Assembly: GCF_002113885.1 (NCBI RefSeq)
Contig: NW_018479948.1
Span: 1-64,000 of the forward strand
Length of the DNA stretch: 64,000 nt
Direction: 5' to 3'
From: Mizuhopecten yessoensis
Lineage: Eukaryota
The notes below the pieces were generated by a model. That model saw only the letters and a program-made list of their open reading frames with translations, was not told the origin of the DNA and made no database searches. Position 1 is the stretch's first letter. Every line of letters begins with the position of its first letter. The position numbers were made by a program, and so were the translations under genes. Shown piece by piece: positions 6,951 through 38,314 of this stretch.

Positions 6951-7424
6951 TATTATATGTATGGAAGTTTCTGTCATTTTTCTAGTATTTCATATCACAA
7001 TTTAACAAAGAACAGACTGGCTTTGTTTTTAGTTACGAACAAGTTATGTTATAGGTATGTTATATTTATGGGACCATGCTGAAACGCCAACTCAGCCGAG
7101 GTATTCTTACACTTAGTTTGATCAAAATCATTTGTACAAAATTTGAACAAACTCTATCAATAAACGACGTCGTTACAGTAGACACTGAGCTAGCAACACC
7201 TAAATACGTCACTTAAGAATGAAGTTACTAGTCCAATGACATTAATTCGGGACGCAAAGTGACAACGAAGTAATCGTTTACACTGTATTCTTCGATAAAA
7301 TTGTTAGGCATAACAACCATACGTGAAGGAACAGAGAAATCAGAACAGAGTGGAAGTGGTCCCGGTGAACGGCAGAGTCAGCAGCGAAATCGGAACCTAT
7401 ATCATAATTAGAGGTGGTGAGCAG

Positions 7425-8258
7425 CAGACACCTCTGATGGGAGGAGTGATAACACACCTCTGATGGGAGGAGTGATCAGACACCTCTGATGGGAGGAGTG
7501 ATAACATACCTCTGATGGAAGGAGTGATAAGACACCTCTGATGGGAGGAGTGATAACACACCTCTGATGGGAGAAGTGATAACACACCTCTGATGGGAGG
7601 AGCGATAAGACACCTCTAATGGGAGGAGTGATAACACACCTCTGATGGGGGGAGTGATAAGACACCTCTGATGGGGGGAGTGATAACATACCTCTGATGG
7701 GAGGAGTGATAAGACACCTCTGATGGGGGGAGTGATAACATACCTCTGATGGGAGGAGTGATAACACACCTCTGATGGGAGGAGTGATAACACACCTCTG
7801 ATGGGAGGAGTGATAACACACCTCTGATGGGAGGAATAATAACACACCTCTGATGGGAGGAGCGATCAGACACCTCTGATGGGAAGAGTGATAACATACC
7901 TCTGATGGAAGGAGTGATAAGACACCTCTGATTGGAGGAGCGATAACACACCTCTGATGGGAAGAGTGATAACACACCTCTGATGGGAGGAGTGATAAGA
8001 CACCTCTGATGGGAAGAGTGATAACACACCTCTGATGGGAGGAGTGATTACACACCTCTGATGGGAGGAGTGATAACACACCTCTGATGGGAGGAGTGAT
8101 AACACACCTCTGATGGGAGGAGCGATCAGACACCTCTGATGGGATGAGTGATAAGACACCTCTGATGGGAGGAGCGATCAGACACCTCTAATGGGAGGAG
8201 CGATCAGACACCTCTGATAGGAGAAGCGATCAGACACCTCTGATGGGAGGAGTGATCA
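7425..8258. repeat. 26-bp minisatellite (acacctctgatgggaggagtgataac), about 32 copies
   Basis: Tandem units are directly visible and explain the repetitive ORFs at 7397-8159. Confidence 0.95.
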
Positions 8259-10066: not shown

Positions 10067-13000
10067 TCAGCTAGCTGCCCGGACACTGGGGAGATTGTGA
10101 AGCAGGCTGTTTTTCTTATAACACCCAAGACTACACAGAGGAACACCAGTCCGAGAACAGGCGTACTTCTTTACATTCTTACACCCTGATATACTGCAGT
10201 ATTCCTTCGCTTTCGGTGGTCTGAAATATTAAAGATTTAATTTTATGAAACAAGATTTCACTTGCTGTCTACTTGTGTCTAAGTGATACCTACAGAAAGC
10301 TGATAGTGGCTAGAGTGATTAACTGAATTTTCCTTGTGGATTCACCGTTAGTCATTGGTAGTCAAAAATATTCTAGGTAACATATTACCGTACTAAAATT
10401 GCATTAATTGAGTTTGAGGAAGAGCAAGAATGATTGAATTCAGATGCCTTCCTAAGTCAGAAATGAGGGAGTAAAATAGGGTGTCTATCACCAAAATATT
10501 TTACCATGTAAAGACTCACTTGATTACAGAAACAATGTCTGGTATTAAATTTGCCACAAGACTGGCAAACAGAATTAAGGCAGGTGATGCAAAGTCAAAT
10601 CAGAGAAAATGAAAGGGTCAAATTCACTTGCAGCAAGAGAGATCAGTGAGCCATGGTCAGTTATCTCCCCTTGTCAGTTAGACAAATTACCTCCCCTGTC
10701 TGTAGGACCTTGTTATACATGGTCAGTTATCTCCCCTTGTCAGTTAGACAAATTACCTCCCCTGTCTGTAGGACCTTGTTAAACATGGTTAGTTATCTCC
10801 CCTTGTCAATTAGACAAATTACCTCCCCTGTCTGTAGGACCGTGTTAAACATGGTTAGTTATCTCCCCTTGTCAGTTAGACAAATTACCTCCCCTGTCTG
10901 TAGGACCTTGTTAAACATGGTAAGGTACATGTGCATGATGTTAGAATTGATAATCATTTTACTTAAATACCTGGTAGTTTGGGCAGTGAAGGGGAGCTGA
11001 AATCCTACTGGCACTGAGATTGTTATCCTGGACTGGTTGTTTGTATACCGGAACCTTGGGATGTTGGCCCTTTTAAATCCTTTCCCCTGTAAACAGGATC
11101 AATCACACTGGTGTTTAGTTACAAGGCAGAAAAAAGCGAAAAGAACAGGTTTAAATTGATGCTGTGATCATATATAATGTAGCATCAACACAAAGGCCTC
11201 GATATGTTTTACTCGTAAAGACAGATGCCATGATTCGGCATGTGTCTGTATTAACACAAATAATTTTTTAATTGATACATTTAAGAATATAGAAGATATT
11301 CAAATATAAAATGTATGTATGCTAACCATATCAAAAGCAGAAATAATTCTTTTGTAGTCAATCATCATCTTCCATATATCATAAACATAAAATAACAAAA
11401 AGACATATGGACACGAACACTAATTCCAAACTACAAACTGCAGTGGAACACAACAAAATATACAGGTTCATTTATTTTGTTTATGAAGTTATAACCTACA
11501 GCCAAAAATTTAAAATACAATGTTGAAATGTCTTACTTTTTTCTTGGAGTCCTGTTTCTTCAGCAGTCGGTCTAGAGTCAGTTTCTGTAAAAGTACGATC
11601 AATGGAAACATTAGAGGTAGACCTGCCAAAGTCATTCATCAAGACCCTGCTGTCAAATTTCACTAACCTTAACATCATATCTATTAAATCAGATATTGAA
11701 AATAGCAATTATTATCGAAAGTCTTATGATGCTTTGAAAACAGTTGCAAAGTAATCAGATTTACATTTAGTATTTAAGATACAATTAACATGTTTTATAT
11801 TACTCCAGATGTTCCTTCTAAGTTAAAAAAAATGGAGGTTCATTCATGTTGTTAGGTTTTTACAATAAAGATAAATTAATCTTTGAAAACCTGAAAAAAT
11901 CTAAATAACATCCTAAGTGATAAAAGATGATAATTTTAAATTATGAAATTTTAACTCCTCTACTACTGTTGGCATGATTCAATTGTTCAGATGAAATATA
12001 ACCATTTTTCACATTAAAACATGTCCAGCCTGAGAGAAAAATCCCGACATCCTTTCAGAGATATGGAAATTTAGACAACTTCCCATATTTACTCTGTCGT
12101 ACCTTGTCCTTCTCCCGTTTTTCGTGAGCCTGTTGACGCCGTTTCTTAGCCCTCTGTACTCGTTTCAGCTGCTGTTCCTCTGTCAGCTCCACCTGTTTGT
12201 AGCCTGGAGAACACAAACATTTATACTCAAATTGCACATTATAATGTAGCCCAGAGAACAATACAACCAAGTTGTACTTAAACCATTGAACAAACAGAAT
12301 CATTGGTGATGTCTTACTTAAAAGTAGGTAAGAGGAGTAACTGTTAATATTTATGTAAGGGAATCCAGAGTAACTGTTAATATTATGTAAGGGGATCCAG
12401 AGTAACTGTTAATATTTATGTAAGGGGATCCAGAGTAACTGTTAATATTTATGTAAGGGGATCCGAGTAACTGAGAGATATAAGTAATGGGGTCATTATT
12501 GATGTTTTCATTTTGAGAAGCAAGCAAGGGGAATAACTGCTGATGGGTGTTTTTTCTGAGAGAAGTAAAATATTTGAAAGGGAAGCCACTGTTGATGTAA
12601 TACTAGTGAGAGATACATCGTAACATGTATTTAATGGGAGTTGGTGTTGATGTAATACTAGTGAGATATACCTCGTAACATGTATTTAATGGGATATGGT
12701 GTTGATGTAATACTAGTGAGATATACCTCGTAACATGTATTTAATGGGGGATGGTGTTGATGTAATTCTAGTGAGAGATACCTCGTAACATGTATGTAAT
12801 GGGAGATGGTGTTGATGTAATACTAGTGAGAGATACCTCGTAACATGTATTTAAGGGGAGATGGTGTTAATGTAATACTAGTGAGAGATACCTCATAACA
12901 TGTATTTAATGGGAGTTGGTGTTGATGTAATACTAGTGAGAGATACATCGTAACATTTATTTAAGGGGAGTTGGTGTTGAAGAGGTATTTCAGAGGAGTC

Positions 13001-16000: not shown

Positions 16001-18290
16001 TGATACTATATTAATTCTATTCATGTCATAAAATGGTGTTATTAAGATCATATATATAAATTTAGCAGGAAATATTTAGAAAATTTGAAATTACTTTTCA
16101 AAAATGTTAGTTATTCAATTTTGTTAAACATAACAGTATCAATTATCTATGTAAAAATTAAATAGATTAATAAAAGGAATTACGTCACGCTTCTTATACA
16201 TCAATCCAGAGACGTATATATTACATTACGTAATATATACGTCTTTGATCATCCGAAAGCAAAATACTAAATGACATGAAAACTTGATTCGACTCCCAGA
16301 GATACTGTATCCACATATATTTTATTCAACTCGTTGGCCATCTCAAGTAAATGTGATCTCTATAGGTACATGGTAGATAATAATTTTTTTATGCAATGAA
16401 CGTTATAAACGTATTGACGTACATGAACATTCTACTTTTTTTTTTATTTATAACAACTATCGATATAATATGTATAAATATAGATTTGTTCCAATATATA
16501 CTAAAGATACATGGTCGTGAAAAGTAAATCTACTCATACTAAATACTCGTCGAATTTATTTAATCAAATTTAAGTCTTTAAAAACATCAAGTTAGATGAA
16601 TGCATAACCACAGACTTTATCCAATTCCGTGTACAATATCTAATTTTAAACATAAACTTAGTCCCGTGCAATTGAATAGATTCTTGATATATGAAATCCA
16701 TTTAAAATCAGCGAAATCATTTTTATGTAAATTCAGCATAAGCTTGTATATTATTCTGAATTTGAAAAAAAATGAAACTTAAAGCGTTTCACCGTGTTTC
16801 TTTCTTCTTTGCATATACAATTAATATACAGTATTGTTTTTCTATAACAGATAAGGCCTAACAATCCAACATATGGACTTCAATATTTATTTACGTAAAA
16901 CATGTATTTCAATTAACTTATATTTACATATAGAATAATATTTAATTTTCAGATTGATGTCCCTTTTTTTGAGTTGGAAAATTGCGTATTTTCTTTTTTT
17001 TAAGATCGTAGACGTGATGGGATTGTAATCTACACATTAACACCAATTAATTCACTCAAAATATATTCATGCTATTTATTAAGAGTTGAGTATAAGTTAT
17101 GAAGTTATTAACATTTAGTTATCATAATTTCATTTCCAATGTTTCAGGTGTTATGACATCGCAATAACAATGTCATATATATAAATGAGAAAATAACNNN
17201 NNNNNNNNNNNNNNNNNNNNNNNNNNNNNNNNNNNNNNNNNNNNNNNNNNNNNNNNNNNNNNNNNNNNNNNNNNNNNNNNNNNNNNNNNNNNNNNNNNNN
17301 NNNNNNNNNNNNNNNNNNNNNNNNNNNNNNNNNNNNNNNNNNNNNNNNNNNNNNNNNNNNNNNNNNNNNNNNNNNNNNNNNGGGTAGTATTGGGTCATAG
17401 TCACGGCAATTCGGTGATGTTTTCGGCACCAAATCGCATATTTCCCGATAAAATATGACAGATGGAAGTAAATAACGTCTACAAAGGTGATATTTCACAG
17501 TAATAAAGAAGTATTTGGTTCATAACTGGATCGTATGGGGTAGTATTGGGTAGTATTGGGTGGTATTGGATAGTATTGGGTGGTATTGGGTAATTAGACG
17601 CGCCCCTTTGAACAGTCGATAGCCTTAGCACATTATTTTGGATTTCTTACTTCTTTGTTCCCAAGGTTTCCCCACCAATCTTTAGTTTCAGCTTAATGGC
17701 AGGTTTTGCCAATCCCCCTGGAGCTCCCAGAGCAAAGGGATCAAGGTCATGGTCCCTTCTCTTCTTGTGCTTCTTTTTATGTTTCTTATGTTTCTTGTGG
17801 GAACTGCTAGGGGAGTCCACTATAAACAACAACAAAACATAGAGCATACAGCATGCTCCTGAATGTACATACAACCTATAGCTTTGTGTCTACGCATATA
17901 TGATATATAAAACACAGTCAAAATACAAATACAATCTGGAGAATTGTTGCCATATTGATCTATATATGTAAATATATATACCACCCGTGTACTTATATTA
18001 GTTCACCAAATTACACCCTAATCAGACAGAGCAAGACACGAATATGATACAGTTCTTTTTGATATTAGAAATTTAGGCTAAGCTCATGCCTTACTGTGTC
18101 GTGCTACACGGTGCCCTGTGAAGAAACATTAAAAAACGATTAATTCAACCCCCCCCCCCGCCTAATTTGTAACTGCATGAAACTTCTTTAGCGTACACGT
18201 ATTAGCACAGGTAGTTTTGATACCCGGTTAATGAGTGTAATTACCTGAAAGTAACTCTTCCTCTGTTCCAGAACCTTTACGTTTTCCCAT
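10067..18290 (-). CDS. INO80B: INO80 complex subunit B (PAPA-1 / Ies2 homologue), 9 coding exons, ~330 aa, with a C-terminal HIT-type zinc finger
   Basis: Exons: 18290-18245, 17819-17651, 14786-14704, 14079-13856, 13190-13139, 12203-12103, 11584-11537, 11086-10971, 10220-10067. All are GT-AG with consistent phases; total 993 nt. Diagnostic motifs: HKKHKKHKKKHKK; IKLKLKIGGETLGTK; EEKEWLDALEKGDLDDSG..KDPRLLTARQRAL; LTEEQQLKRVQRAKKRRQQAHEKREKDKKLTLDRLL (PAPA-1); CSISGCKNVKKYACSRTGVPLCSLGCYK (zf-HIT). Confidence 0.95.
10651..10921. repeat. 66-bp tandem repeat (~4 copies) in INO80B intron 8
   Basis: The unit catggtcagttatctccccttgtcagttagacaaattacctcccctgtctgtaggaccttgttaaa repeats and produces the spurious ORF 10653..11000. 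Confidence 0.95.
12335..12980. repeat. Two related minisatellites in INO80B intron 5: ~33 bp at 12335-12473 and ~49 bp at 12590-12980
   Basis: Units gagtaactgttaatatttatgtaaggggatcca and ggtgttgatgtaatactagtgagagatacctcgtaacatgtatttaatgggag. Confidence 0.9.
15471..17605. mobile_element. Apparently non-autonomous DNA transposon with long (>=200 bp) terminal inverted repeats and an 8-bp TSD, in INO80B intron 2
   Basis: The left end cggcgcgtctaattacccaatactacc and right end ggtattgggtaattagacgcgccc are inverted matches extending about 200 bp, up to the N gap. The identical 8-mer ctttgaac flanks both ends (15463-15470 and 17606-17613). The interior is AT-rich with a gap at 17198-17381. Confidence 0.9.
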
Positions 18291-18959: not shown

Positions 18960-19660
18960 CGTTTTGAGGAGAAATCCTGTGGGTATTTGCGTTTAAAAGC
19001 AGCAACATCACACGCATTTCTAATATTTACATTCAATCCATTCAATAAAACAGAACATGTGTACACAAATGAACGTTTGAAATAATTAGTTCTGGCAGTG
19101 GGAATATAAACTTGTTGGAAACTGATGACCTTGTATTTCTAAAACTGATATCATTGACATAGGTAAACATATTACTTAAAACACTTGGAGTATCCCCATG
19201 TAAAATTTTGTAAGCCAGAACTGCTTTCCTAAAAATAAAATAATCTTCTATTGGCAGCCACTTTAACTGTTTAAAAAGCAAAATAGAAGGGTTAAAAACG
19301 TCTCTTATATTTAACAAAACTCTAGCTGCCCTTTTCTGAAGTTTTGAGATTTTATGAATATATGGTTTGTTACTAGCCTCACACTAGACTACAGAACAAT
19401 AGATAAAATGTAGGAAAACTATACTTTGATAAACTTTACTGAGAACATCATTAGACATGAAAGGTCGTTACCTTTTCAGAACACCAATCTTTTTCGAAAT
19501 TTTCTTTGATATGTAATCAATGTGGTCTTTCCAAGACAGACAACAGTCGACAAAAACACCAAGGAGTTTTGCACAGTGAACAGTTTCAATAATTAAGTTA
19601 TCAATAGTAATGTTCAACTCACGACATTTAGATAACATTTGAGACGATCCCCCCCCCCAA
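18960..19660 (-). mobile_element. Decayed 3' part of a CR1/L2-group LINE (C-terminal end of ORF2 reverse transcriptase)
   Basis: Broken ORFs read KLLGVFVDCCLSWKDHIDYISKKISKKIGVLKR and LFKQLKWLPIEDYFIFRKAVLAYKILHGDTPSVLSNMF, typical post-RT sequence. Confidence 0.85.
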
Positions 19661-20405
19661 TCAACATGCACTGAGTTATGTTCGCTATTATGTTTATTTT
19701 ACACTACACGTTGCCCAGCCACCTTTTAATTTACAGCTAGTAATGTCTAGATAAAAGACACTTTCCTTTTGTGTTATGAAAGTCTGTACTACGTTGTCCG
19801 TATTTATAGAAATTTCCCTGTGGACATGTAGCATTGCTAGCGAGGAAAGACGGTCTTGGTTTGTCTTGGTACTATTCAGTAAAAAATATAAAGTGAAACC
19901 GACCTCTGCTAAACTATATAGTCATATATATAGAATCAATTAATTTTCTAATCATGATATTAGACATTGCTTATCAGATTCCTTTTCAGTACGTTAATAA
20001 AAGCAGCTCAGAAAATCAAATGAATTAGCCCCCCATCCCCCAAAAACAGAAGGAAAAAGTACATAGTGATGGTTGGTTATCATGTTTATCTCATTCGAGT
20101 TAGTTAATTTTCAAATTGTTAAAGACCTCGAACAGTAATGTTGGTTAAAGAATGAAAAATGAGTGTGAAAATTAATATTGTAATTATTCTGTTATGCTGA
20201 AAATGTTTCCCAAAAAAATATATAAAAAAAGTGTCGACAAAGATGTAAATTAGAAATCAGTATGGAAAATTCCAATACTATTTCTAATATTTCAGTAGAG
20301 TGATCTATCAACATTTTGATTCCATCTCCGTCAATCACCCCCCACATTCATATACCACTATAAAAAGGTGCTTCCACATGTTTCTACCCCATTTAGTTCA
20401 TCAAC

Positions 20406-22642
20406 ATGGCAGAGAAATACTTTTTTGGACATGGACTATATGCCCAATTATCATCCTACAAGGACGAGACCTACGTCCACATCGATGGCCGTAATGGACG
20501 GAGCGCGAGTGTGACAGGTGCCGAGTTCCTGAGTGTAATATTAATACTGTAATAATATTATTGTAGGATTGTACTGTAAGATGGATGCAACAGTGCCTGC
20601 TATACCAGTGTGAACGCACGGTATGGGTGAATGTAATGCTATGTAGTATACAATCGTAATAGTATTGTAAAATGAATGTAATAATGTATATCACAGTGTA
20701 TGATGAGTGTCATTGTATGCGCAGTGCGTTATATTGTCTATTATAACAAGGTATGATAGTACGTATGAACAGTGTAATAGTGTGCTTATCATTGTATGAG
20801 AAGTGTAATTGTTTCCACTATATTATTGTACGCTAGCATAGTAAGATGAGTGCTTTACGGTCAACCATATCATTGTTATATTGTACTTTATGATGACCTC
20901 TTCTTGCGCACAACAGTGTGCCTGAGTGATAATACAAATCTCTGAAAATCTCTGAACCTGTCACAAAACTATGACCTCCTCATGGAGGGAATTAACCGGC
21001 TGAGGCGGGTAAGTGTGAAAGTTCTAAACATATTTATATTACAACATGTATCAAACTGGTTATACGAGATGAAAAGCGTTTAACACTTCCAAATCCTGCT
21101 GTTTATACTTTATTGTATAATGATCAGTAAATGTTGATATTATATGTGTTATGTTTTAGGAATCGTGCTCGCCAAAAACACCCACAGCAACACCAGGCCT
21201 ACCTCCGATATCAAAAACCCCCACAGCAACACCAGGCCTACCTCCGATAGCAAAAACACCCACAGCAACACCAGGCCTACCTCCTATATCAAAAACACCC
21301 ACAGCAACACCAGGCCTGCCTCCGATATCAAAAACACCCACAGCAACACCAGGCCTGCCTCCGATATCAAAAACACCCACAGCAACTCCAGGCCTACCTC
21401 CGATATCAAAAACACCCACAGCAAAACCAGGCCTACCTCCAATATCAAAAACACCTACAGCAACACCAGGCCTACCTCCAATATCAAAAACACCTACAGC
21501 AACACCAGGCCTACCTCCAATATCAAAAACACCTACAGCAACACCAGGCCTACCTCCAATATCAAAAACACCCACAGCAAAACCAGGCCTACCTCCAATA
21601 TCAAAAACACCCACAGCAACCCCAGGCCTACCTCCCATATCAAAAACACCCACAGCAACACCAGGCCTCCCTCCAATATCAAAAACACCCACACCAACAC
21701 CAGGCCTACCTCCGATATCAAAAACACCCACAGCAAAACCAGGCCTACCTCCAATATCAAAAACACCCACAGCAAAACCAGGCCTACCTCCAATATCAAA
21801 AACACCTACAGCAACACCAGGCCTACCTCCAATATCAAAAACACCCACAGCAACACCAGGCCTACCTCCAATATAAAAAATTATGAGTAATGCTTTGTGT
21901 TGCTTTTCTACTGCAGATACTCTTCATTTCTAACAATTGATATTCAAATGAAAAATGAAAATTATGCTTATTTGACTTTAATACTCTTCATAGACTCCAG
22001 ACATGGTATTACCACCAGTTCCAGTACGTCAAATTCTGGCACCAGCACCGGCTAACGTGGCGAGTACATGCTATTTTCACTGTTTGATTATATAATAGTT
22101 AGCTACAGGTTAAGTACTAAATATCAGATTCCTATACTCCAATGTTCACGTGAGCGTCAAACACTTTTACTAACACATTGTATGGCCGCGCAATCCTATA
22201 AACAAATATTGTTTCACTGTCCTCTGTAAGTATTATTCATATTGACCATATTTCGATTTTATATGTATACACCAAACATGATTGAGAAAATACTAATCAA
22301 GCGCTTAATCATTTCCAGTCTGACGAGCCACAAATGAAAACAGAGGTGACTTCCCCTCAAAATCAAGCAGCTTGGTAAGTTTCAATACACCATGAATACG
22401 TTTTACCTACTATTTCTATAGATTTCGAGGTCTCCAGAAGGTGAGTGTAGTATTTAAGTTCAGCTGTACTCTAATCGTTTTCCCGCACATATTTTAACAA
22501 AATATCAAAAAGCGTTTCATCCGTTACTGAATAATTTTCTCACGAAGAATATTCATTTTTATTTCAGCTGACCGTCGACTTTCAGGATATTGAAGTCAAT
22601 GAGGACGTCATGAAGGTCCTCCTCGCCTCTATTGACTTGTAG
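20406..22642 (+). pseudogene. Disrupted intron-containing gene: PC4-like N-terminal domain, then a Pro/Thr-rich 14-aa repeat, then short downstream exon-like blocks
   Basis: 20406-20531 reads MAEKYFFGHGLYAQLSSYKDETYVHIDGRNGRSASVTGAEFL. After a ~420-bp insertion, 20955-21008 reads NLSQNYDLLMEGINRLRR|GTAAGT. The phase-0 acceptor ttttag|21160 opens ESCSP(KTPTATPGLPPIS)n up to a TAA at 21874. Further AG/GT-bounded blocks lie at ~21993-22109, 22319-22374, 22422-22440 and 22568-22642; their frames are unresolved. Confidence 0.55.
21170..21880 (+). repeat. 42-bp minisatellite, ~17 copies, probably coding
   Basis: Unit aaaacacccacagcaacaccaggcctacctccaatatca. Variation is mostly at third positions of the KTPTATPGLPPIS frame. 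Confidence 0.95.
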
Positions 22643-22699
22643 GTTATAATTATTTGATTTCTTAATTTGAGTTTTATTGGGGAAAAAATAGATGAAAAA

Positions 22700-23450
22700 T
22701 CAATATGTAGTAGTAATATATCCCAGGGTTTTAACATCACACAACTGCCATACTCTTTGTGCATGGCCACAATCCTCTTGTGAAATGTCTTCTTTGGATA
22801 AATCACCATAGAAAGATGATTTTGGGGATAACCGAACGTCAGAAAACTTGGAGTCGTCCGTCAAGTACTGGTAATGATAAATCTCCTTCCTGAGCAAGAT
22901 TTCCCTGTGTTCCGGTCGAGTAAACCCTTCCTAAAATATTTGAAATTGTCGTGTCCTTTTTCTTAGAGATTGGTCACCAATGTATCCAGTGAACTGGGCA
23001 TAAAACGGCACGAGTCCAAAAAGCGTAAATTCCCGAGTGAAAAGGAGATGTAGTTTTTCATGTTTTGTGCTATGCATGTGATATTTTGCTCTTTGTATTT
23101 TCTTATTGCATCCCAGAGTATGTGTCCATCGAACCGCGACATGTTGTGATAAAACACTGGAATGTGTTTTGGGTGTTTAACATTCAAATTACATTTGTTG
23201 CAGGCAGCTCCCCGGAACACCCCCCCCCCCCCCCCCCCCCCCCGTCACGTGGTAATGGTCCTTTAGCTTGTCTTTGTTGTTTTTAAAGTACTTGTTGCAT
23301 AGATAACATTTGTTCGTATTGTCAAAAGTCTCCTGATCTTCTTGGGTCATGGCCATGGGTTCCATGTCACTCAAAGTTTGCTGGATTTCTCTTTCTTCTT
23401 CAATGAGATAATTAATAAACGTTTCTACCACGTTAGGTCCACGTTGACTC
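22700..23450 (-). pseudogene. Polinton/Maverick protein-primed family B DNA polymerase fragment (endonuclease VII-like Zn-binding segment plus exonuclease region), frameshifted
   Basis: Reads CYLCNKYF..KLKDHYHVTG / FRGAACNKCNL..IPVFYHNMSRFDGHIL..YISFSLGNLRFLDSCRFMPSSLDTLVTNL / LRKEIYHYQYLTDDSKFSDVRLSPKSSFYGDLSKEDISQEDCGHAQRVW. These match canonical Polinton PolB motifs. A poly-C run at about 23220-23243 breaks the frame. Confidence 0.9.
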
Positions 23451-23489
23451 ATAGTGGTAGATACATGTGTACGTCTTCACCCTTGAGGA

Positions 23490-23910
23490 TATGACTGGTA
23501 CTTTTTATCTGTGTGTGGACTTTAATCTATCAAGAGATATCCGTATTTTGCTGCAGTGGCCGTTTCGTAAGCTTTTGTGAAATATTGAGCTTTGGTAGGA
23601 AATATCTGTCTCCCTAAGATATAGACTTGCTGCTTATCTCTCTTGATTTTGAAAAAAACCGATATAATGACTATTCAGAGAAATCGTACGCATGCACTTG
23701 CCTTTAGAAAATGCATTTTGTGTCAAAAAGATGACGGTGGTATTGTGATGATGACAGCCGACCGTAAATAAATGTTGTACGTCGACACTATTGCACACCG
23801 TTTCCATCAAATCATCTAAAATTAGTAACAATGGTAACCCGTCCCACCACCATTCTTCTAAATTTTCTTTTGTAGTTATCCCTTCGTGAAAGGTTAAGTT
23901 TTTATGATCC
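23490..23910 (-). pseudogene. Polinton A32/FtsK-like DNA packaging ATPase, C-terminal half
   Basis: Reads LTFHEGITTKENLEEW..LLLILDDLM (Walker B)..LFTVGCHHHNTTVIFLTQNAFSKGKCMRTISLNSHYIGFF. After a frameshift it continues RDKQQVYILGRQIFPTKAQYFTKAYETATAAKYGYLLID*SPHT. Walker A is missing. Confidence 0.9.
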
Positions 23911-23999
23911 GTGTGGTAAAGGATATTGTATTAAATAGGTACAGAGTGTCGAATTAAACTGTATGGGTGGTGATGTTTCGATCTTTACACAGTCTGATG

Positions 24000-24506
24000 T
24001 CACGTAATGATGTTTACTCGTAGATATATACATAGGCTGGTAACGGTGATAGATAGCAACACAATAACTCCTGTTAGCTTTAGTATCGTAAAATGGATCT
24101 TGTATTTGTCAGATATACTGTCGTAACTGCTGGATAAACATGTAGTGAGCATGATGCTTTCTGTTTCACAATCCTTCTGATCCATGTTTTCGGTAACAGT
24201 GACATTCGAAGACTGAATCAGTTACTAGTATTCATCGCCATATGAAGCCGACAGTATAACGACCTGTTCCAATAGTACTAATCTGTTACAAAATTATTTA
24301 AATGCTTTTGGCCCCCTACGCGGTAAAATGTCTAATAATTTTCTTGCTCTGTCGAATCGGTTGTTTTCTACGATGATACCTTACACCATGTACTTGGGTA
24401 GAATATTGGATTTGAATAAATGATCTGTAACATATAATGTCGGTAGACGTTCTACGAGCAACACTCGGTTCTTTCTTAAAACGGATTTGTGCACACTGTC
24501 CATCAT
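24000..24506 (-). pseudogene. CARD-domain gene (RAIDD/caspase-2-like CARD) with an in-frame C-terminal hydrophobic segment and four in-frame stops
   Basis: From the ATG at 24506: MMDSVHKSVLRKNRVLLVERLPTLYVTDHLFKSNILPKYMV*GIIVENNRFDRARKLLDILPRRGPKAFK*FCNRLVLLEQ. The same frame continues after TAG TAA (24227-24222) into ORF 24000..24185, which ends ILKLTGVIVLLSITVTSLCIYLRVNIIT. Confidence 0.75.
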
Positions 24507-24870
24507 AAATCGATGTTCTCCTGTCTGTAATTTTCAAACTAACCCATGTGTCGATATGAACAAAAAGTTCTAACAGTTTTGATTTAAGACGGGTGAATTC
24601 AAACGTTGGAAATAAACTGGACATTTAATAATTCTCTTATCTCTGACAAGGGTCTTCAAATAGTTCGGGAAATGTTTAGCACGCTTTTTTTTTGCCAGGG
24701 AGAGCACCCGGTGACCTCACGGGTTTCAGAGAAATAAACCGGGCATTTAATAATCCTCTTACCCACACATTTAAATCGACACCTGAAACGTTGTCATACG
24801 TTTTGGGTTTTGATCTAATGGTACGGTAATTTGATAATTTTTATTGTATTTGATGGTCAGTGTGTTTGTG

Positions 24871-25700
24871 ATTCAGATCCGGTACATATTTGTTGTGTAG
24901 TTTTCGACATCATAATACGAGCCAGGGAAAATATTCTACAAAAGTTTATATATATACCTTTTCCATATTAACACAGAAATATTAGCCATTGTTTTTTCTT
25001 ATAACTTTTTTCATATTTGGTTTATTTTCACAAACATTAACGACACAATACCAGCACAAACACACACGTACCTACATACAAATGTACCTACCTGTGCATC
25101 TAATAAAGGGATGTATACCACGATACTTTTGATAACATTTACTAAGAAATGTTTTTAGACACTTATTCATCTCATTTATTTTCACAGACACAAACATAGA
25201 AACATAAAAACATATGAATGCATACATCTATTAAAGTGATATATAGAAGAATACTTTTACAGCATTTAAATAAGTTTCGAACATTTTATGTATATACCAG
25301 TTTCATATTTACTAATTTTTTCTTCTTCATTTTCATAGACATACACAGCACAATGCTAACATACCGACCCATTAAACATAGTTAAACTACCACACACGTA
25401 CCTATAACATACGTCTAATAAAGTGAGGTATACCACAATACTTTGATAACATTGAAATTAGTTTTGTCATTTCTAACAGAGATAAAATATTCTACAACAG
25501 TTTTTATATGTACCTGTTCAATCTTTACAAAGAAATTTTAGACATCGATATACAAACACACACGTACCTACATACAAATGTACATACATGTTAATTTTAG
25601 AAAGTGATAAAAAGGACAATATGTTAATAGCATTGAAATAAGTTTTATCATTTTTAACAGAGATGAAAATATTCTACAACAGTTTATATATATACCTGTT
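24871..25700. repeat. Left arm of a long inverted repeat, internally made of degenerate tandem units; partner at 28761-29216
   Basis: attcagatccggt..ttgttgtgtagttttcgacatcataata..cacaaacacacacgtacctacatacaaatgtac is the reverse complement of sequence in 28920-29216. Confidence 0.85.
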
Positions 25701-25809
25701 CATTATCTACTATTGGTGGAGGACACAAGGAGGCGGAAAATCCGCCGGGATTGTCGAACGGTGTTTATGAAGCGAATACCGTTGAAGTAGATATTCTAGA
25801 GCTCGGTTC

Positions 25810-26290
25810 ACACACGTGATAGACGTTAACTTTTGATCGTGAAGCGTGTGATGAACGTCGACATTTTTTCACTGGATGCACGTGATTGACGTCAAGGTTT
25901 TTTACTCGATGCACGTCACTGACCTTATTTTTTTCTCGATGCACTTGACTGACAATTATCTTTTTACTCGATGCACGTGGTGGACGTTGATTATTTTACT
26001 CGATGCACGTGACTGACGTAAACTATTTTTACTCGATGCACGTGGTTGACGTTAATTCTTTTTCTAGATGCACGGGGTTGACGTAAAAATTTTGACTGAA
26101 TTCACGTTATTGACGTTAAATTTTAAGTTGTAAGTGCGATCTCTCCGTACATAGAAAAAAAGTATTGGAATCTATGTAAAGGTCTGAGATCTGAAGTCAA
26201 CGTAGTTGCATGACGTTAAATATTTTGAATTGATTCACTTGATTGACGCCAAGTTTTTGATTCGATGCACTTGATTGGCGTTTAATTTTC
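25810..26290. repeat. Degenerate ~33-bp tandem array rich in CACGTG and TGACGT motifs
   Basis: Recurring unit tttttactcgatgcacgtgactgacgt, about 12 copies. Confidence 0.8.
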
Positions 26291-28440
26291 ATCATTACAT
26301 GTATGTGGTACCGTTCGTGATGCCAGGTTTTCGGTCAGATGTTAAACGCTGGGTGTAGTTATTTTGTATTAGATGTACGAAAACGATGTCAAATTTGATC
26401 TCGTTGAACGTGTTTGATGTATCGCCGGTGTAAATAAAACCAAAATGAATCGCAACTCCTCTCGTCTCTTTCAATCAATCAGACCTCGCTTCTTAACCGA
26501 GCGTATGATTTATAGCACTACTTGGCAAACTAACTAATGTTGTATAAACGAAAACTGGTGCCCACCCATCCCCTGCACGTGGTCCTAACATGGGAACGCT
26601 TCAGACTTCCACTCCATAACCATGTATGCAATTGGTGAGTATGAAGAGATGAATATACAAAGCTAGCAGGATTTGCCCTAAGGGCCTGACACATTCTTGA
26701 TAACTTTATCCCTCGGTCGTCACATTGAAACTGTCGAAATCGACACCCTTTAACCATATACACATTTAAAGATTTGGAACCGAGGATCGTCCCGATTTCA
26801 GATGACTAAATGCCACGATCATAACTATAACAAGGTCGAGATCCCTACCCGAAAACGATATAAACAATTGTTGAATGTTGTACGCTAGACACGAAGAGTT
26901 GAACACAATGATATCACAAAGGAATGAAGTACAGGGGTCCGGTTTAGTTTAAATCAATTTTATTGCAACAAAAGACAAATGTATTGGACAAAAGTTATTG
27001 CAACTTACTTACGTCCTTTCCGTAACAGAAAATATATATACAAAATTAATGTGTCACGCAATAATCTAATACAGATTTATATATGTATATATATATAAGA
27101 TGTTAAAGATGGGTTACAACAAAAGAGGTAATGATAGGATTAGGGACACCAACGTATAGTGTTTAAATATGTATTCGGAGAGTTTACTTGAGATCGCGTA
27201 TGTGATTTTCCCAATCGAGTCGGCGTAAGTAGTATAACTAATCTATACACACATATCCTTCTGCTTTTCTAAAGTTCAATCACATTCCGTGCCGCATTTG
27301 CTTTTCTCCTGTGTCACTCCAAGTCTTTCTGTTAATTCTTGTCTTACATACTTAGCCGACTAGATTAGGAAAACCGGACACGCACTCTTTGTCATATGGA
27401 AACGGTTATGATATTGATGGACGCTAAGATTAAAGTTAGTACACAGAGATCGTTGGTGTTGGAAAAAGGGAGAGGGGCTGGAATGAGAGAGGAGGGGGAG
27501 GGGAGAGACAGATGGGAATAGTCGAAGTAGGTATCCTGGTTATTCAATAAGACTGTTGGTTATTACATGTTAAACCGTTTGGAGCTAAAAATGAACAGTT
27601 GTACAGACCTACAAATTTGAACGTTTAGATTGTAGTCAAGGTTTGCATCTCCGAAGAGAAGGTGGTCCTATCCTTGGGAACGGATCCGCAGCGTCATAAC
27701 ATGGAGGTGATTGAGATCCCAAACATATCACATGGATATACATATATGTATACGATTCTCTATCGAATTCGATATGATGCCTTCATTAGAAATGGGATTA
27801 TATTGCAGTACAAAGGAAGAGTAAAAACTCCCCTGGTACATTGTAGCCAACGTTCAAGAGAGTAGTGCAGTTCATACACTCTCCTGATCGTAAAATAAAT
27901 CCAAGTCCGTTTACGTTATTACGGGATTTTTCGCGTTATTACGACTTTTATTTTCGCGTTATTACGTATTCACTTCACGTTATTACGTGATTTTATTTCA
28001 AAGTCTAGACATTGTTTTTCACAAAACAGTCATTATTTTCCTAGCGTTGATCAATTTGTAGTGAGAATGAACCAATTCACGTAATTCACGCTCATTGCAT
28101 AACAACGAAATGGCACGACAAACATTTAACGTCGATCTTACACACCGAACCAAATATTTACACTTAAAACGCGACATCGATAGGAAATTTTCACAAGACC
28201 GACAATTTGGCGTCGCGCAGTCGCATCGACCTCGAAATTTACAGTTCACCTCGTAATTTACATACGACATAAAGGCATAAAAGGTCTTCTGATAGGAACG
28301 AAAATTACTTGTCGCTCACACACATCCGGTCGAAAACTCACACTTCATAAGCGACTTCGAAAGAAAACCTCTACTCGTAACACATCGACACGACCGAAAA
28401 GTTGACGTCGTGCAGTCGCATCGACCTCGGAATTTACACC

Positions 28441-28761
28441 TCGGACAAGTTATACAGAGCGTGCTTAAGGAAGGAAAATATGTGCTGGGGAAGGCAAAGA
28501 TTAGAAAATGGTTGGAGAAGCAAGAGGACCACGGGGTGCACGCTAAAGTGACCAGGTAGTTTCGGAGGAGAAAAAGTCATCTCTCCTTTCATAGACTATC
28601 AGTGGGACGCCGACACGGCCGTCTTGGCGTCTCGCGCAACGGAGAACGACGGGTACGGTTACTTTCTGCTGGCGATCGACGTGTTTTCTCGCTACGTGTG
28701 GACGGTTACACTGCGCATGCTGCGGGGATCGGAGATGGTAAAGGCTTTGCGCTCGATGTTA
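28441..28761 (+). pseudogene. Polinton retroviral-like (rve) integrase, N-terminal/core fragment
   Basis: With frameshifts it reads DKLYR/VLKEGKYVLGKAKIRKWLEKQEDHGVHAKVTR*FRRRK/VISPFIDYQWDADTAVLASRATENDGYGYFLLAIDVFSRYVWTVTLRMLRGSEMVKALRSML, a typical Polinton integrase motif set. The ORF track does not show this frame. Confidence 0.85.
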
Positions 28762-29216
28762 CACATGTATATGTAGGTACGTGTGTGTTTGTGCTCATAT
28801 TGTGTCGTTATTGTTTGTGTAAATCAAAACATGAAAAAGCAATTAGAAAAAATAAACCTATGGCTAACATTTCTTTGTAAATATGGAACAGGTACATATA
28901 AAAACTATTGTAGAATATTTTATCTCTGTTAGAAATGATAAAACTAATTTCAATGTTATCAAAGTATTGTGGTATATATCAATTTATTAGATGTACAGGT
29001 ATGTACATTTGTATGTAGGTACGTGTGTGTTTGTGCTGATAATGTGTCGTTAATGTTTGTGAAAATATGAAAACAGTGATAAGAAAAAACAAACAAATGG
29101 CTAATACTTCTGTGTTAATATATATGGAACAGGTATATATATAAACTGTTGTAGAATATTTTCCCCTCATATTATGATGTCGAAAACTACACAACAAATG
29201 TTAACCGGATCTGAAT
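28761..29216. repeat. Right arm of the long inverted repeat (partner 24871-25700)
   Basis: Reverse-complement match described for the left arm. Confidence 0.85.
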
Positions 29217-33707: not shown

Positions 33708-33965
33708 TTAAATAATTCTAAAATGGCCAAGATAATAATGTATAGTTGATGTATGAGCACACATTCCCATAGTTCTTTGACCAACTGGGCATTGGCAGTA
33801 GTAATCTATTACTGGATTATTATCATTTGGTGTCGTGCTGTGCTGAATCCAGACATTATATTGAGTCTGGCTTTTGTGTCTGGAACAAATCTGGCAACAG
33901 ATGAGGTCGTGATAGTGCTGATTCACCCATATTACATAATCTTTACGAATTCTGACTCTGCTCAT
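33708..33965 (-). mobile_element. SWIM-type zinc-finger fragment resembling the C-terminus of DDE transposases
   Basis: ICSRHKSQTQYNVWIQ...IDYYCQCPVGQRTMGMCAHTSTIHYYLG has the CxCx(n)CxH pattern. No intact DDE core is visible. Confidence 0.55.
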
Positions 33966-35469
33966 TTGGAGAGATTTGGCTGTTTACCCTCTGAGCAAAA
34001 CAGTTTGTTTCTGTGAGATGAATCTTCAGTTAATGTGCCTGTTCTCTGTCTTTTCTGTCAGTGTCCGGTGATCTTTGATAAATTGGTCCCCGTATCCAAT
34101 TGAGACATGCAGTCACAATCTTTAGCACTCCCATAAGTATATCAATAGTTCTCTACTCAAATGGTCAGGACGAAGGAACACTGGAACACTGGAACTATAG
34201 ATTTAGTCAATGCTTGTACTATAGACTGAAAGGTTTTTGGAATACTAGGCAGAGAAATGCCAAGAGCGAAAAACTTAATTACAGAGATATCAGTTTTTAT
34301 CTTAACCCAAAACAGTTAAAGAGCATTTTGTGCAGTTTTGTTATATACTGAAGAAGAAAGAAATGTGAACAGGATCCGTAAAACAGGTCCTTGATTGTTA
34401 AGAAAACAAAACCACGAGTGGTTTCATCTTCAAAACTTTCTGTTTCAATTTCTCTTTAGTCTCTTTAAGTCAGTTTATCCAAGTCATTATATTTTTTTCT
34501 TTTTTTTACATTTCATGTACCTTTACATTTATGAGATTTCGCGAAGATAGGATGGCGACCTTCACCAATACATTTACTCTTCATTTTGAGATGAATATCA
34601 ACAACTGAGTATGAAATATCCCCTAAAAGCAATGTAAAAACGAAAGTCTGATGTTAAAATGTATAAAAAATTATAAATGTGTAAGAACAAATTCTAAAAA
34701 GTGACAAGAAAATTACATTTGATCTCGAAATTGATTGTTAATAAAATATTTATCAATCACGCCAAGTGATGAAATAAATTGGAATTTGAAATTGTTTGTG
34801 ACTTAACATGCACTGAAAGATTTATTGTAGGCTTGCAACGAATTCGTAACCAATGACCTGTAATCAGGTGCATTGCTTTTAAGTGGACGCCAGGAAGATG
34901 TCTTAGGCCCTCACCTTATTGGGCACACTGGATACTTTGTTGTGCGAAATGAATACTTTCCACCACATTTTTGTTATGAATTTGTGCAAACATATTTGAA
35001 GTAACACCACTTCTTCATACTATGATAATTTTTGGTATAAAAAAATAATAAGAATGAAAAATCCTATATTTTACATTAAAATTTTCACAAAATGTTCAAT
35101 TTAACTCATATTCTGGATGATAAATATATTATTACAGCACTACAAGAGAGTAAACGTCCTTTCCCAAGTAATACGATGCAAAAAATACGATTATTTTTCA
35201 GAAAAATACTTTCAGAATGATATAGCATTATTCGTTCCCCATGCTGTAGTAAGGTTAATTAATCATCTAAATATTTAGAAGAGTGATTCAAAGTAATAAC
35301 ATCGGATGTATAAGGGATTGAAAAAAGTTAAAACAACAGCATAAATCTCGTAGCACTTCTGAAACAAAATTTATGAAGGGGCAGGCTCCTATGTAATTCA
35401 ACATAGCTGGAAATAGTCCCTTTATAAAAAAGCCTAAATATACCACAATCGCCAAATAGCATGATCCCC

Positions 35470-36396: not shown

Positions 36397-36894
36397 TCAT
36401 ATTGTATGTTGTCTCTGTATTGTTTTGTATATATGTTATGACTGATAAGTCAACCGACTTAAAGTAATAAAGAACTTGAACTTGAAATGTTATTAATTGT
36501 ATATTTATGTAAATACTTAAGTTTGTGTACCAAACATTTACCATAACAACCACTTATTCTACCGTCGCTTCATTTGAATCTGAACAAAAAAATCGTTGCC
36601 TTTGAATGCAGCGAATAGAAGATACCGTTATGATTGGTCAATACCAAGAAGTGATATTTTCAAAGTGTGAAAATATCACTTTTGATATTTGTCACAGTGT
36701 GAAAAAATCACTTTTGATATTTGTCCCAGTGTGAAAGATATCAGTTTTATCAAGTTGATAGAATCCGATATTTCACTGGCAAAAATGTAATAAAACATTT
36801 TATTGTTTACATTCGCATGTTTCAAGTCATTGGGTAATGTGCCTGTGTTGAGTGATGTGCTAAAAATCCTTGTATGTATGGGTGCTGTGATGTC

Positions 36895-37165
36895 TTTTAA
36901 TTCTTTTAGTATTTTGCCGTAGATCTGATTAGGTCCTATTGCTTAATGATGGTTAATGTTATGTAATAACTTTCCTATACCATTGTTGGTGATGTGTATT
37001 TCAGGCATGATTGGGTGTGATGATGGTCCTTTGTCAGGCATATCATGGTTCTTTTCTGTTGTGAAGGCACCTTGAAATGGTTGGTTTAGGATATTTGCTT
37101 TTGTTGTTGTGTCTGTTGTGAGTTGTCCATCTTTGCGGAGTGCAGGAATGTCAGTGATTTCATTT
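36895..37165 (-). mobile_element. CR1-type LINE ORF2 fragment (linker just before the RT domain)
   Basis: The minus strand reads IPALRKDGQLTTDTTTKANILNQPFQGAFTTE..MPEIHITNNGIGKLLHNINHH*AIGPNQIYGKILKELK. Confidence 0.8.
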
Positions 37166-38314
37166 TTTGATTGTGCTGATGTTTTTTTCCTTTTTGTTTC
37201 AATTTTTGCACACTGTCGCCATTTTCTATATGGAATCCAAATGTCCCCTAAAAGCCTGTGTGGTACTGTGCTGAAACCCCTGAATAGTTCCTCTTTGGTT
37301 CAGAATTTCCTTTCAATCTTGAATTTCTTTTCAATAGTTGTAGTATAATGGATGAGTGCCTTTCATGAATCTAAACGGTTCCTCGCTTAGCAGTTCATTA
37401 TATTCAATGTGATTTGTGATTAATATATTTTCATTACTTTTCCATAGTTTTCCAAAACATGTTGGTAAACGTGACTGGTCCATTATTTTACAAGTTCTTT
37501 TCGTCTCCTTTTTGAGTTTTTCTGTGATCTCTCCTCAGTCTCAAGGATGCCTTGAATAGTTGATACAAGTGTTGGCTGGTCGTGTTTTCTATTTCTCATA
37601 GTAGTTTAGGAAGTAGATCATGCGTGTCACGTGATTAAAAGGTATGTAGTTAATTAACTATTTTCTTTATTTTTTGTTACATTTCGGAATGCGTGTTGTG
37701 TGCTTAGTTTCAGACGTTGAGATATCCCCTAGATTGGTTCTGTTACAAAACACTACAAAGGGAATCAGCCAATACGTTTACTTTATACTTTTTGCTAGTC
37801 GCCAATCTTGTTTGTTTTCCGTCATGTACATAACATGAATTAAGGTCTTACAGTATATCCGACATTTTTAGCTTTCGTCACTCCAGAATTTATTTTCTTC
37901 GAGATTTTCTAAACACCCTTTGCAATATCGCTTATTAATTATTTGACTTTGTTTCTTCTATATACGTTTTAGTGATTTCAACACCTCTGCCAGGTTCGGC
38001 TTGTCTGTTTATATAATTAATTACTCTCACCGTCTTGTCATCTAGTGTATTTATTTTCTGACCTGATTCAGTTCTCCTTTTGGGTAAATGATGGTCATAT
38101 CAGTTTGTATTGGAGCGGGAGTGCTTATGAATACAGCTGATTTTTTTGTGACTTTGAGCGATAATTTTGTTTTATATTTATCGGCACAATCGAATTTCAT
38201 TATAAGCGACATAGACCTAGAGCCAAATTGAATATGTAAAGTCCGGGTATGAAAGTATCAATTAGAAGGTTCACGAGACAACTGAAAAAACGCTGCTTAT
38301 CACAAAAATCCCTT

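What the first reader, a model, noticed from the sequence alone, without database searches (positions are those of the whole stretch)
24000..24506. Hidden CARD (+ tail-anchor TM) gene carried inside a Polinton/adintovirus-like element
Seen: a minus-strand frame absent from the ORF track reads MMDSVHKSVLRKNRVLLVERL..HLFKSNIL..I..ENNRFDRARKLLDILPRRGPKAFK*FCNRL. It is intronless, lies immediately upstream of and co-oriented with the packaging ATPase, and continues in the same frame (across TAG TAA) into a hydrophobic C-terminal helix. Established: LLDILPxRGPKAF is the hallmark of RAIDD/caspase-2-type CARDs, and an N-terminal CARD with a C-terminal TM anchor is the MAVS architecture. Inference: the ancestral element encoded a captured death-fold decoy that could interfere with RLR-MAVS or caspase/PIDDosome signalling. 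That would be an immune-evasion module in a Polinton-like virus. This copy is dead (four stops).
Basis: partly seen in the sequence, partly recalled or inferred. Interest (0 to 1): 0.85.

Follow-up and report, generated by a model that had tools for sequence, protein, structure and literature searches.

The report
Dead CARD gene beside Polinton remnant
A decayed small gene for a caspase-recruitment domain (CARD) really lies next to the wreck of a Polinton-type virus-like element in an animal genome, but nothing shows that it belonged to that element or had a membrane anchor.

Summary
The frame reads as quoted, with four in-frame stops and no frameshift. The CARD is real. Two stop-free pieces searched apart each hit Pfam CARD (E 2.8e-4 and 1.9e-4) at collinear profile positions. 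A 72%-identical relative, P0001, passes the CARD cut-off at 42.3 bits.

The co-oriented neighbours are Polinton-type. One is an A32/IVa2-like packaging ATPase. The other is the N-terminal part of a family B polymerase.

Three parts of the interpretation fail or stay open:
- **Linkage:** the ATPase lacks its P-loop N-terminus exactly at the junction with the CARD region, so linkage to the element is unproven.
- **Membrane anchor:** the hydrophobic tail has no relatives and is no more hydrophobic than 9% of open pieces in the window. It follows a tandem stop at the expected end of the CARD.
- **MAVS likeness:** none was found, and no RAIDD/caspase-2 subtype can be assigned.

The best reading is a CARD-only decoy gene, like iridovirus vCARD, probably once cargo of the element. 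Only two relatives exist, both incomplete.

The parts
24000..24506 (-). The frame as the finding describes it: 168 codons plus terminal stop, broken by four in-frame stops, no frameshift
24222..24506 (-). CARD gene as I read it: start codon to a tandem stop, about 93 codons, broken by two in-frame stops
   Evidence: Pfam CARD on two pieces searched apart. Relatives P0001 and P0002 begin at the same methionine and P0001 reads open across the first two pieces. P0001 scores 42.3 bits on CARD.
24000..24185 (-). Unbroken 61-codon ORF with its own ATG and a hydrophobic stretch six residues from its end; in the same frame as the CARD gene; origin unknown
   Evidence: No homologue and no Pfam family. 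It occupies the space where the missing ATPase N-terminus would be expected.
23495..23930 (-). Remnant of an A32/IVa2-like (FtsK-HerA type) packaging ATPase: N-terminal P-loop part missing, one frameshift, one in-frame stop
   Evidence: 30 relatives at 39-58% identity. 10 of the 31 aligned members (the window piece among them) hit Pox_A32 (best 5e-7) and 2 hit Adeno_IVa2. Window piece alone: Pox_A32 E 0.051. Outer bounds and counts; truncation.
22585..23476 (-). Remnant of the N-terminal part of a family B DNA polymerase (DNA_pol_B_2 type); supported for 22966-23476, unverified below that; at least one frameshift in the supported part; most of the gene is missing
   Evidence: Pfam DNA_pol_B_2 E 0.0077, profile 8-73 of 468. 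PHROG 1907 'DNA polymerase' E 2.8e-4. Endonuclease VII-like zinc motif upstream, E 0.007 and 0.036.
24871..29216 (.). Neighbour: block bounded by inverted arrays of about 240-nt units, 364 bases upstream of the CARD start
   Evidence: I1-I11, D3-D8; sequence ends read; no clear target-site duplication.
28296..28773 (+). Integrase-like (rve) pieces inside that block, on the opposite strand; could belong to the same element or to another transposon
   Evidence: Pfam rve E 0.017; pieces listed.
21056..22018 (.). Neighbour: 39-nt tandem repeat array that lies just beyond the polymerase remnant
   Evidence: D1; spurious long ORFs.

Best explanation
Window 24222-24506 (minus strand) is the wreck of a small intronless gene of about 93 codons that encodes little more than a caspase-recruitment domain (CARD). 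It sits head-to-tail with a 2-kb remnant of a Polinton/Maverick-type virus-like element: a 5'-truncated packaging ATPase followed at once by the start of a family B polymerase. The most likely history is that the CARD was a host-derived accessory (cargo) gene of that element lineage. While alive it would have worked as the CARD-only proteins of iridoviruses and of vertebrate cells do. Its CARD would bind the CARD of a host adaptor or initiator caspase and so block the assembly that starts apoptosis or inflammatory signalling. Shown: the CARD, the identity of the neighbours, and the decay of all three genes. Inferred: cargo status, CARD-only architecture and decoy function. The hydrophobic ORF downstream is probably not part of the protein.
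For: CARD: two collinear Pfam hits on pieces searched apart. Relative P0001 is 72% identical, scores 42.3 bits on CARD and reads open where the window has its first stop. Solved CARDs of caspase-9, BCL10, NOD1, cIAP1 and RAIDD are its only meaningful matches. CARD-only: Pfam places the end of the second piece at profile position 65 of 85. The 22 codons that follow would complete the domain just before the tandem stop. Grouper iridovirus CARD is 91 residues (PMC4457926) and the frog virus 3 CARD-only chains are 93-94 residues (not a significant match). Element: ATPase relatives with Pox_A32 and Adeno_IVa2 hits; polymerase hits; the polymerase starts within about 40 bases of the ATPase end, a compact virus-like layout. 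Cargo: same strand and close spacing. The only relatives among 1.84 billion representatives are two unnamed ORFs from raw assemblies, with no named entry from an annotated proteome. The ATPase relatives come from the same kinds of source. Adintoviruses are reported to carry Bcl2, IAP and gasdermin-domain homologues (PMC8502044).
Against: The ATPase lacks about 55 N-terminal residues, including the P-loop, exactly at the junction with the CARD region. A breakpoint therefore lies between the two, and the adjacency could be secondary. No terminal inverted repeats, capsid or protease genes were found; the only integrase-like piece is 4 kb away on the other strand. The region is a patchwork of repeats and LINE fragments. 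There is no second copy in the window. CARD relatives are far rarer than ATPase relatives (2 against 30), and both are incomplete. The third CARD piece has no hit of its own. The function is inferred only by analogy.
Confidence: 0.45

Rival explanations
1. A host CARD pseudogene or gene fragment that lies next to a truncated Polinton remnant only by accident, in a repeat-rich stretch. It was never part of the element.
For: The ATPase is cut off at the junction. No element ends or capsid genes were found. The surroundings are a mosaic of unrelated repeats next to host channel exons. CARD relatives are much rarer than ATPase relatives.
Against: The coding part is intronless with a conserved start. 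No named entry from an annotated proteome appeared among the hits, which came only from raw assemblies. The gene has the same strand and tight spacing as the element genes. No poly-A tail marks a retrocopy. No caspase or P-loop motif occurs in any frame of the window that could be a further exon.
Confidence: 0.3
2. One reading: one 168-codon protein with an N-terminal CARD and a C-terminal tail anchor, a MAVS-like or CARD19-like membrane-bound decoy carried by the element.
For: CARD and hydrophobic part share one frame with no frameshift. The whole frame has fewer stops than shuffles. The hydrophobic stretch lies six residues from the end, as in tail-anchored proteins. Small CARD-plus-transmembrane proteins exist: CARD19 is a 183-residue protein of the outer mitochondrial membrane (PMC8997538).
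Against: A tandem stop falls at the expected end of the CARD, and the next ORF has its own ATG. The hydrophobic part has no homologue and no family. Equal hydrophobicity occurs in 9% of open pieces here. That part lies where the ATPase N-terminus was lost, so it may be junction sequence. The CARD_2 score is below cut-off and no MAVS or BinCARD chain is matched. The linker contains no proline.
Confidence: 0.12
3. No gene at all: a chance open frame with a chance likeness to CARD.
For: Each window piece alone scores just under the Pfam cut-off (21.3 and 21.8 against 23.9 bits).
Against: The two hits are independent and collinear in one frame. Relatives at 62-72% identity in other datasets pass the CARD cut-off.
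Confidence: 0.02

Closest known systems
Iridovirus CARD-only proteins (vCARD: grouper iridovirus CARD, frog virus 3 CARD-only protein)
   Same: A virus-borne ORF of about 90 residues made of a CARD alone. GIV-CARD is 91 residues and inhibits apoptosis and caspase-8/-9 activity (PMC4457926). The frog virus 3 chains are 93-94 residues and were the top, though non-significant, fold match at 30% identity over 57 columns.
   Different: No significant sequence match: the frog virus 3 chain does not appear at E<=1. The carrier here would be a Polinton-type element, not an iridovirus. This copy is dead and its link to the element is unproven.
Cellular CARD-only proteins (ICEBERG, COP/Pseudo-ICE, INCA)
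   Same: Small CARD-only regulators that act by homotypic CARD binding (PMC3775265, listed; details from my own knowledge).
   Different: Those are recent duplicates of the caspase-1 CARD in primates. This CARD matches caspase-9, BCL10, cIAP1 and RAIDD best; caspase-1 appears only as a non-significant fold match.
Adintovirus/Polinton accessory genes for cell-death control (Bcl2, IAP, gasdermin C-terminal domain homologues)
   Same: Host-derived cell-death regulators carried by Polinton-class viruses of animals (PMC8502044).
   Different: A CARD is not among those reported. Searches for polinton with 'caspase recruitment domain' or 'CARD domain' found no paper.
MAVS and CARD19 (BinCARD-2)
   Same: An N-terminal CARD plus a transmembrane segment towards the C-terminus (PMC8997538 for CARD19; MAVS from my own knowledge).
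   Different: Here the two parts are separated by a tandem stop. The hydrophobic part has no relatives. The CARD is not of the CARD_2 type. No MAVS or BinCARD chain is matched. No proline-rich region is present.

Membership tests
CARD (Pfam PF00619, death-fold superfamily) | Profile match at or above the curated cut-off (23.9 bits) | tested here: met
   The window pieces alone score 21.3 and 21.8 bits, just under the cut-off, but they are collinear. The 72%-identical relative P0001 scores 42.3 bits, E 7.6e-11, and P0002 scores 24.7 bits.
CARD (Pfam PF00619, death-fold superfamily) | Six-helix bundle fold | tested here: inconclusive
   The model of the 63-residue relative is all-helical but of low confidence (pLDDT 67.5) and covers only part of the domain. 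Fold matches are not significant.
MAVS-like architecture | CARD of the RIG-I/MDA5/MAVS type (Pfam CARD_2) | tested here: not met
   CARD_2 scores 15.9 bits against a cut-off of 28.2, while CARD scores 42.3. No MAVS chain appears at E<=1.
MAVS-like architecture | Transmembrane anchor in the same polypeptide as the CARD | tested here: inconclusive
   The two share a frame but are separated by a tandem stop at the expected domain end, and the second part has its own ATG. No relatives cover this part. Its hydrophobicity is within the window's background.
MAVS-like architecture | Proline-rich region with TRAF-binding motifs between CARD and anchor | tested here: not met
   The stretch between the CARD and the hydrophobic segment contains no proline. 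The motif definition is from my own knowledge.
RAIDD/caspase-2-type CARD | Closest similarity to RAIDD or caspase-2 CARDs | tested here: inconclusive
   The 28-residue piece has RAIDD as best match, E 0.025. P0001 matches caspase-9 at 1.2e-3, BCL10 at 1.3e-3 and RAIDD at 0.71. The first piece matches cIAP1 at 0.14.
RAIDD/caspase-2-type CARD | CARD followed by a death domain (RAIDD) or a caspase domain (caspase-2) | tested here: not met
   The downstream part has no Pfam family. No QACxG motif occurs in any frame of the window.
Polinton/Maverick/adintovirus-type element | Protein-primed-type family B DNA polymerase | tested here: met
   The match is weak and N-terminal only: DNA_pol_B_2 E 0.0077 and PHROG DNA polymerase E 2.8e-4.
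Polinton/Maverick/adintovirus-type element | A32/FtsK-HerA-type packaging ATPase | tested here: met
   30 relatives were found. 10 of the 31 aligned members (the window piece among them) hit Pox_A32 and 2 hit Adeno_IVa2. The copy here lacks the P-loop part.
Polinton/Maverick/adintovirus-type element | Retrovirus-like (rve) integrase | tested here: inconclusive
   An rve-like piece, E 0.017, lies 4 kb away on the opposite strand inside an inverted-repeat block. It could belong to another transposon.
Polinton/Maverick/adintovirus-type element | Major and minor jelly-roll capsid genes and adenain-type protease | tested here: not met
   I recognised none among the open pieces from 14 to 40 kb by eye, and none among the few pieces that I scanned against Pfam. 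Pfam covers these capsid families poorly, so decayed remains could be missed.
Polinton/Maverick/adintovirus-type element | Terminal inverted repeats with target-site duplication enclosing the genes | tested here: not met
   The only inverted repeats (24871-29216) do not enclose the CARD, ATPase or polymerase. No clear duplication is seen at their ends.
Viral CARD-only protein (vCARD type) | ORF of about 90 residues consisting of the CARD alone | tested here: inconclusive
   The length to the tandem stop fits, but no intact relative shows the true end. P0001 and P0002 are incomplete.
Viral CARD-only protein (vCARD type) | Encoded within a virus or virus-like element | not tested
   This needs the genomic context of other copies.

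The most novel reading that the evidence does not exclude
A lineage of Polinton-type viruses of invertebrates carried a membrane-anchored CARD protein (CARD plus tail anchor in one polypeptide). It would mimic mitochondrial CARD adaptors and intercept antiviral or apoptotic CARD signalling at the membrane. That would be the first death-fold decoy described in this virus class.
Probability: 0.1. Interest if true: 0.7.

Novelty: new member of a known kind. Interest (0 to 1): 0.35.

Why it matters
Viral CARD-only decoys are known from iridoviruses, and Polinton-class viruses of animals are known to carry Bcl2, IAP and gasdermin-domain homologues. A CARD gene as Polinton cargo would add the death-fold to that list. 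It would also suggest that these elements, which can move genes between species, spread immune-signalling modules in invertebrates. As it stands the copy is dead, the family is very rare in public data, and the link to the element is only adjacency across a breakpoint. The finding is therefore a lead, not a demonstration.

Tried and rejected
- **Second copy in the window:** no second copy of any piece was found.
- **Hydrophobic part:** the homologue search found nothing.
- **Solved structures:** searches with the ATPase piece, the polymerase piece, the ATPase family profile and the third CARD piece gave nothing meaningful. The first CARD piece gave artefactual hits to designed repeat proteins ahead of cIAP1.
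- **ATPase fold:** the model of the ATPase piece had pLDDT 72, and its search of viral structures gave no significant match.
- **CARD fold:** the model of the CARD relative had pLDDT 67.5. Its searches of viral and solved structures were not significant; the top solved hit was the frog virus 3 CARD-only protein at E 1.6.
- **Host organism:** an exact look-up of a host channel ORF, aimed at naming the organism, was not on record.
- **Missing ATPase N-terminus:** I searched for it in all frames of 23850-24650 and for a P-loop motif anywhere in the window. Neither was found.
- **Retrocopy idea:** rejected for lack of a poly-A tail.
- **Inverted-repeat block as element ends:** rejected because it does not enclose the genes.
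- **Not done:** a read-through of the whole frame with X at the stops in Pfam or structure prediction. The tools take no read-through by reference, and I did not type the letters.

Full report
**Observation.** The minus strand of window 24000-24506 translates as the finding quotes: 168 codons and a terminal stop, with four in-frame stops and no frameshift. The other two minus frames carry 10 and 6 stops. Shuffles of the same bases average 11.8 stops, and only 0.45% of them have four or fewer. So the frame is real and more open than chance. I count breaks here but do not place them.

**Is it a CARD?** The tools take no read-through by reference, so I searched the stop-free pieces apart.
- The first piece hits Pfam CARD (PF00619) at E 2.8e-4 on profile positions 2-32 of 85.
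- The second hits the same family at E 1.9e-4 on positions 43-65.
- The third piece and the hydrophobic part hit nothing.

These are two independent hits, collinear and in one frame. A full scan of 1.84 billion representative proteins with the first piece found two relatives. P0001 is 63 residues and 72% identical; P0002 is 69 residues and 62% identical. Both begin at the same methionine. P0001 reads open across the first two window pieces and is 95% identical to the second. P0001 scores 42.3 bits on CARD, well above the 23.9-bit cut-off, and P0002 scores 24.7 bits. The CARD is established.

**Which CARD?**
- Among solved structures P0001 matches caspase-9 (E 1.2e-3), BCL10 (1.3e-3), NOD1 (0.11), cIAP1 (0.16) and RAIDD (0.71). 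No MAVS chain appears.
- The first window piece matches cIAP1 at 0.14, behind artefactual hits to designed repeat proteins.
- Pfam CARD_2, which I recall as the RIG-I/MAVS type, scores 15.9 bits against a cut-off of 28.2.

The subtype cannot be assigned, and there is no specific likeness to MAVS.

**The hydrophobic tail.** The last 73 open codons hold a stretch with a Kyte-Doolittle mean of 2.22 over 19 residues, six residues from the end. Several things argue against it being part of the CARD protein:
- 17 of 184 open pieces of at least 60 codons in this AT-rich window do as well, and 9% of all codon positions lie in open pieces that long.
- The part has no homologue and no family.
- It has its own ATG and is listed as an unbroken 61-codon ORF.
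- Pfam puts the end of the second CARD piece at profile position 65 of 85. The next 22 codons would complete the domain, and a tandem stop follows at once.

An ORF of about 93 codons is the size of known CARD-only proteins. Grouper iridovirus CARD is 91 residues (PMC4457926), and the frog virus 3 CARD-only chains are 93-94 residues. I therefore read two of the four stops as breaks and the tandem stop as the likely natural end. The one-polypeptide model is not excluded: CARD19 is a 183-residue CARD-plus-transmembrane protein (PMC8997538).

**The neighbours.**
- *ATPase.* About 70 bases downstream on the same strand lies a remnant of a packaging ATPase. The piece itself hits Pox_A32 only at E 0.051. 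It has 30 relatives at 39-58% identity. Of the 31 aligned members, 10 hit Pox_A32 (best 5e-7) and 2 hit Adeno_IVa2.
- *Polymerase.* Within about 40 bases of the ATPase end starts a family B polymerase remnant. It hits DNA_pol_B_2 at E 0.0077 on profile 8-73 of 468 and PHROG 'DNA polymerase' at E 2.8e-4. An endonuclease VII-like zinc motif lies just upstream.

This pair in an animal genome is what Polinton/Maverick-class elements carry (PMC8502044). That the window is animal follows from voltage-gated potassium channel exons at 41-49 kb.

**State of decay.**
- The ATPase has lost its N-terminal part and has one frameshift and one in-frame stop.
- The polymerase has at least one frameshift in the supported part, and most of the gene is missing. 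A 39-nt tandem repeat array lies just beyond it.
- No capsid or protease genes and no enclosing terminal repeats were found.

**The junction.** Relatives of the ATPase that start with a methionine carry a Walker A motif at residues 14-20 and have 49-57 residues before the point where similarity to the window begins.
- Similarity in the window spans 23495-23909 only.
- No P-loop motif exists in any frame of the whole window.
- The N-terminal 60 residues of eight relatives find nothing in 23850-24650.

The space where that N-terminus should lie is taken by the hydrophobic ORF. So a breakpoint separates the CARD region from the ATPase. It is either a deletion inside one element, which would remove the intergenic part and the ATPase start, or the edge of a truncated element that abuts unrelated DNA. 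This point weakens 'carried inside' most. It also makes the hydrophobic tail suspect as junction sequence.

**Cargo or neighbour?**
- *For cargo.* The gene has the same strand, tight spacing and an intronless coding part with a conserved start. Its only relatives are unnamed ORFs from raw assemblies: one Logan contig of 1519 bases and one ENA contig of 681 bases. None is a named entry from an annotated proteome. The ATPase relatives come from the same kinds of source. Cell-death regulators are known as adintovirus accessory genes.
- *Against.* There is the breakpoint and the repeat-rich mosaic around it: LINE fragments, and an inverted-repeat block at 24871-29216 that holds an rve-like piece. 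CARD relatives are rare, 2 against 30 for the ATPase. Both relatives are themselves incomplete CARDs.

I put cargo status near one half.

**How it would have worked.** This is inference by analogy. A CARD-only protein binds the CARD of an adaptor or initiator caspase and blocks assembly of the signalling complex. Iridovirus CARD inhibits apoptosis and caspase-8/-9 activity in this way (PMC4457926). The copy in the window is dead.

**Novelty.** I found no paper linking Polintons or adintoviruses with a CARD. If cargo status holds, this is a new member of a known kind, namely virus-borne CARD-only decoys and cell-death accessory genes of Polinton-class viruses.

- I could not tell, so I left it out. 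This was the decisive context test.
- I left the N stretches alone (runs at 239-349, 859 and 17198-17381).

- To search the pieces apart I had to compute their bounds. These appear in my tool calls, in script outputs and in one note, and they imply where stops lie.

Noticed in passing
window 21056-22018: An array of about 25 copies of a 39-nt tandem repeat lies just beyond the polymerase remnant. It produces spurious ORFs of 230-248 codons on both strands.
   Followed up: partly
window 24871-29216: A block bounded by inverted arrays of about 240-nt units (arms 24871-25712 and 28763-29216, 85-95% complementary), with no clear target-site duplication. It holds rve-like integrase pieces at 28296-28773 on the plus strand, cut off by the right arm.
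   Followed up: partly
window 41053-41946 and 48668-49324, minus strand: Host exons of a voltage-gated potassium channel: Ion_trans E 1.8e-32 and BTB_2 tetramerisation domain E 4.7e-22. They show the window is animal chromosomal DNA. An exact look-up of the first ORF was not on record.
   Followed up: partly
window 19045-19700 and 36679-37534, minus strand: Open pieces that look to me like reverse-transcriptase parts of non-LTR (LINE) elements. This is by eye only and was not scanned.
   Followed up: no
window 4087-5406, minus strand: An unbroken 439-codon ORF with long acidic runs. It gives only low-complexity Pfam matches (CDC45, BUD22, Nop14, all below cut-off). A further acidic ORF lies at 3009-3329.
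   Followed up: no
window 7408-8133 and 10653-11000: Two more tandem-repeat arrays that give long repetitive ORFs. Their Pfam matches (PAZ, RING, PHD) are repeat artefacts with no single passing stretch.
   Followed up: no
window 33711-33983, minus strand: A 91-codon open piece with a Cys/His pattern that reminds me of a SWIM-type zinc finger of DNA transposases. It has no Pfam hit at E<=0.1.
   Followed up: no
P0001 and P0002 (relatives, not in the window): Both known relatives of the CARD are incomplete. The Pfam match ends at profile position 59 (P0001) and 38 (P0002) of 85, and P0002 continues with unrelated residues. No intact full-length copy of this family is known in the searched collections.
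   Followed up: partly
window 23230-23250, minus strand: A run of glycine codons (a G-rich simple repeat) lies inside the polymerase remnant, where two of its reading frames overlap.
   Followed up: no
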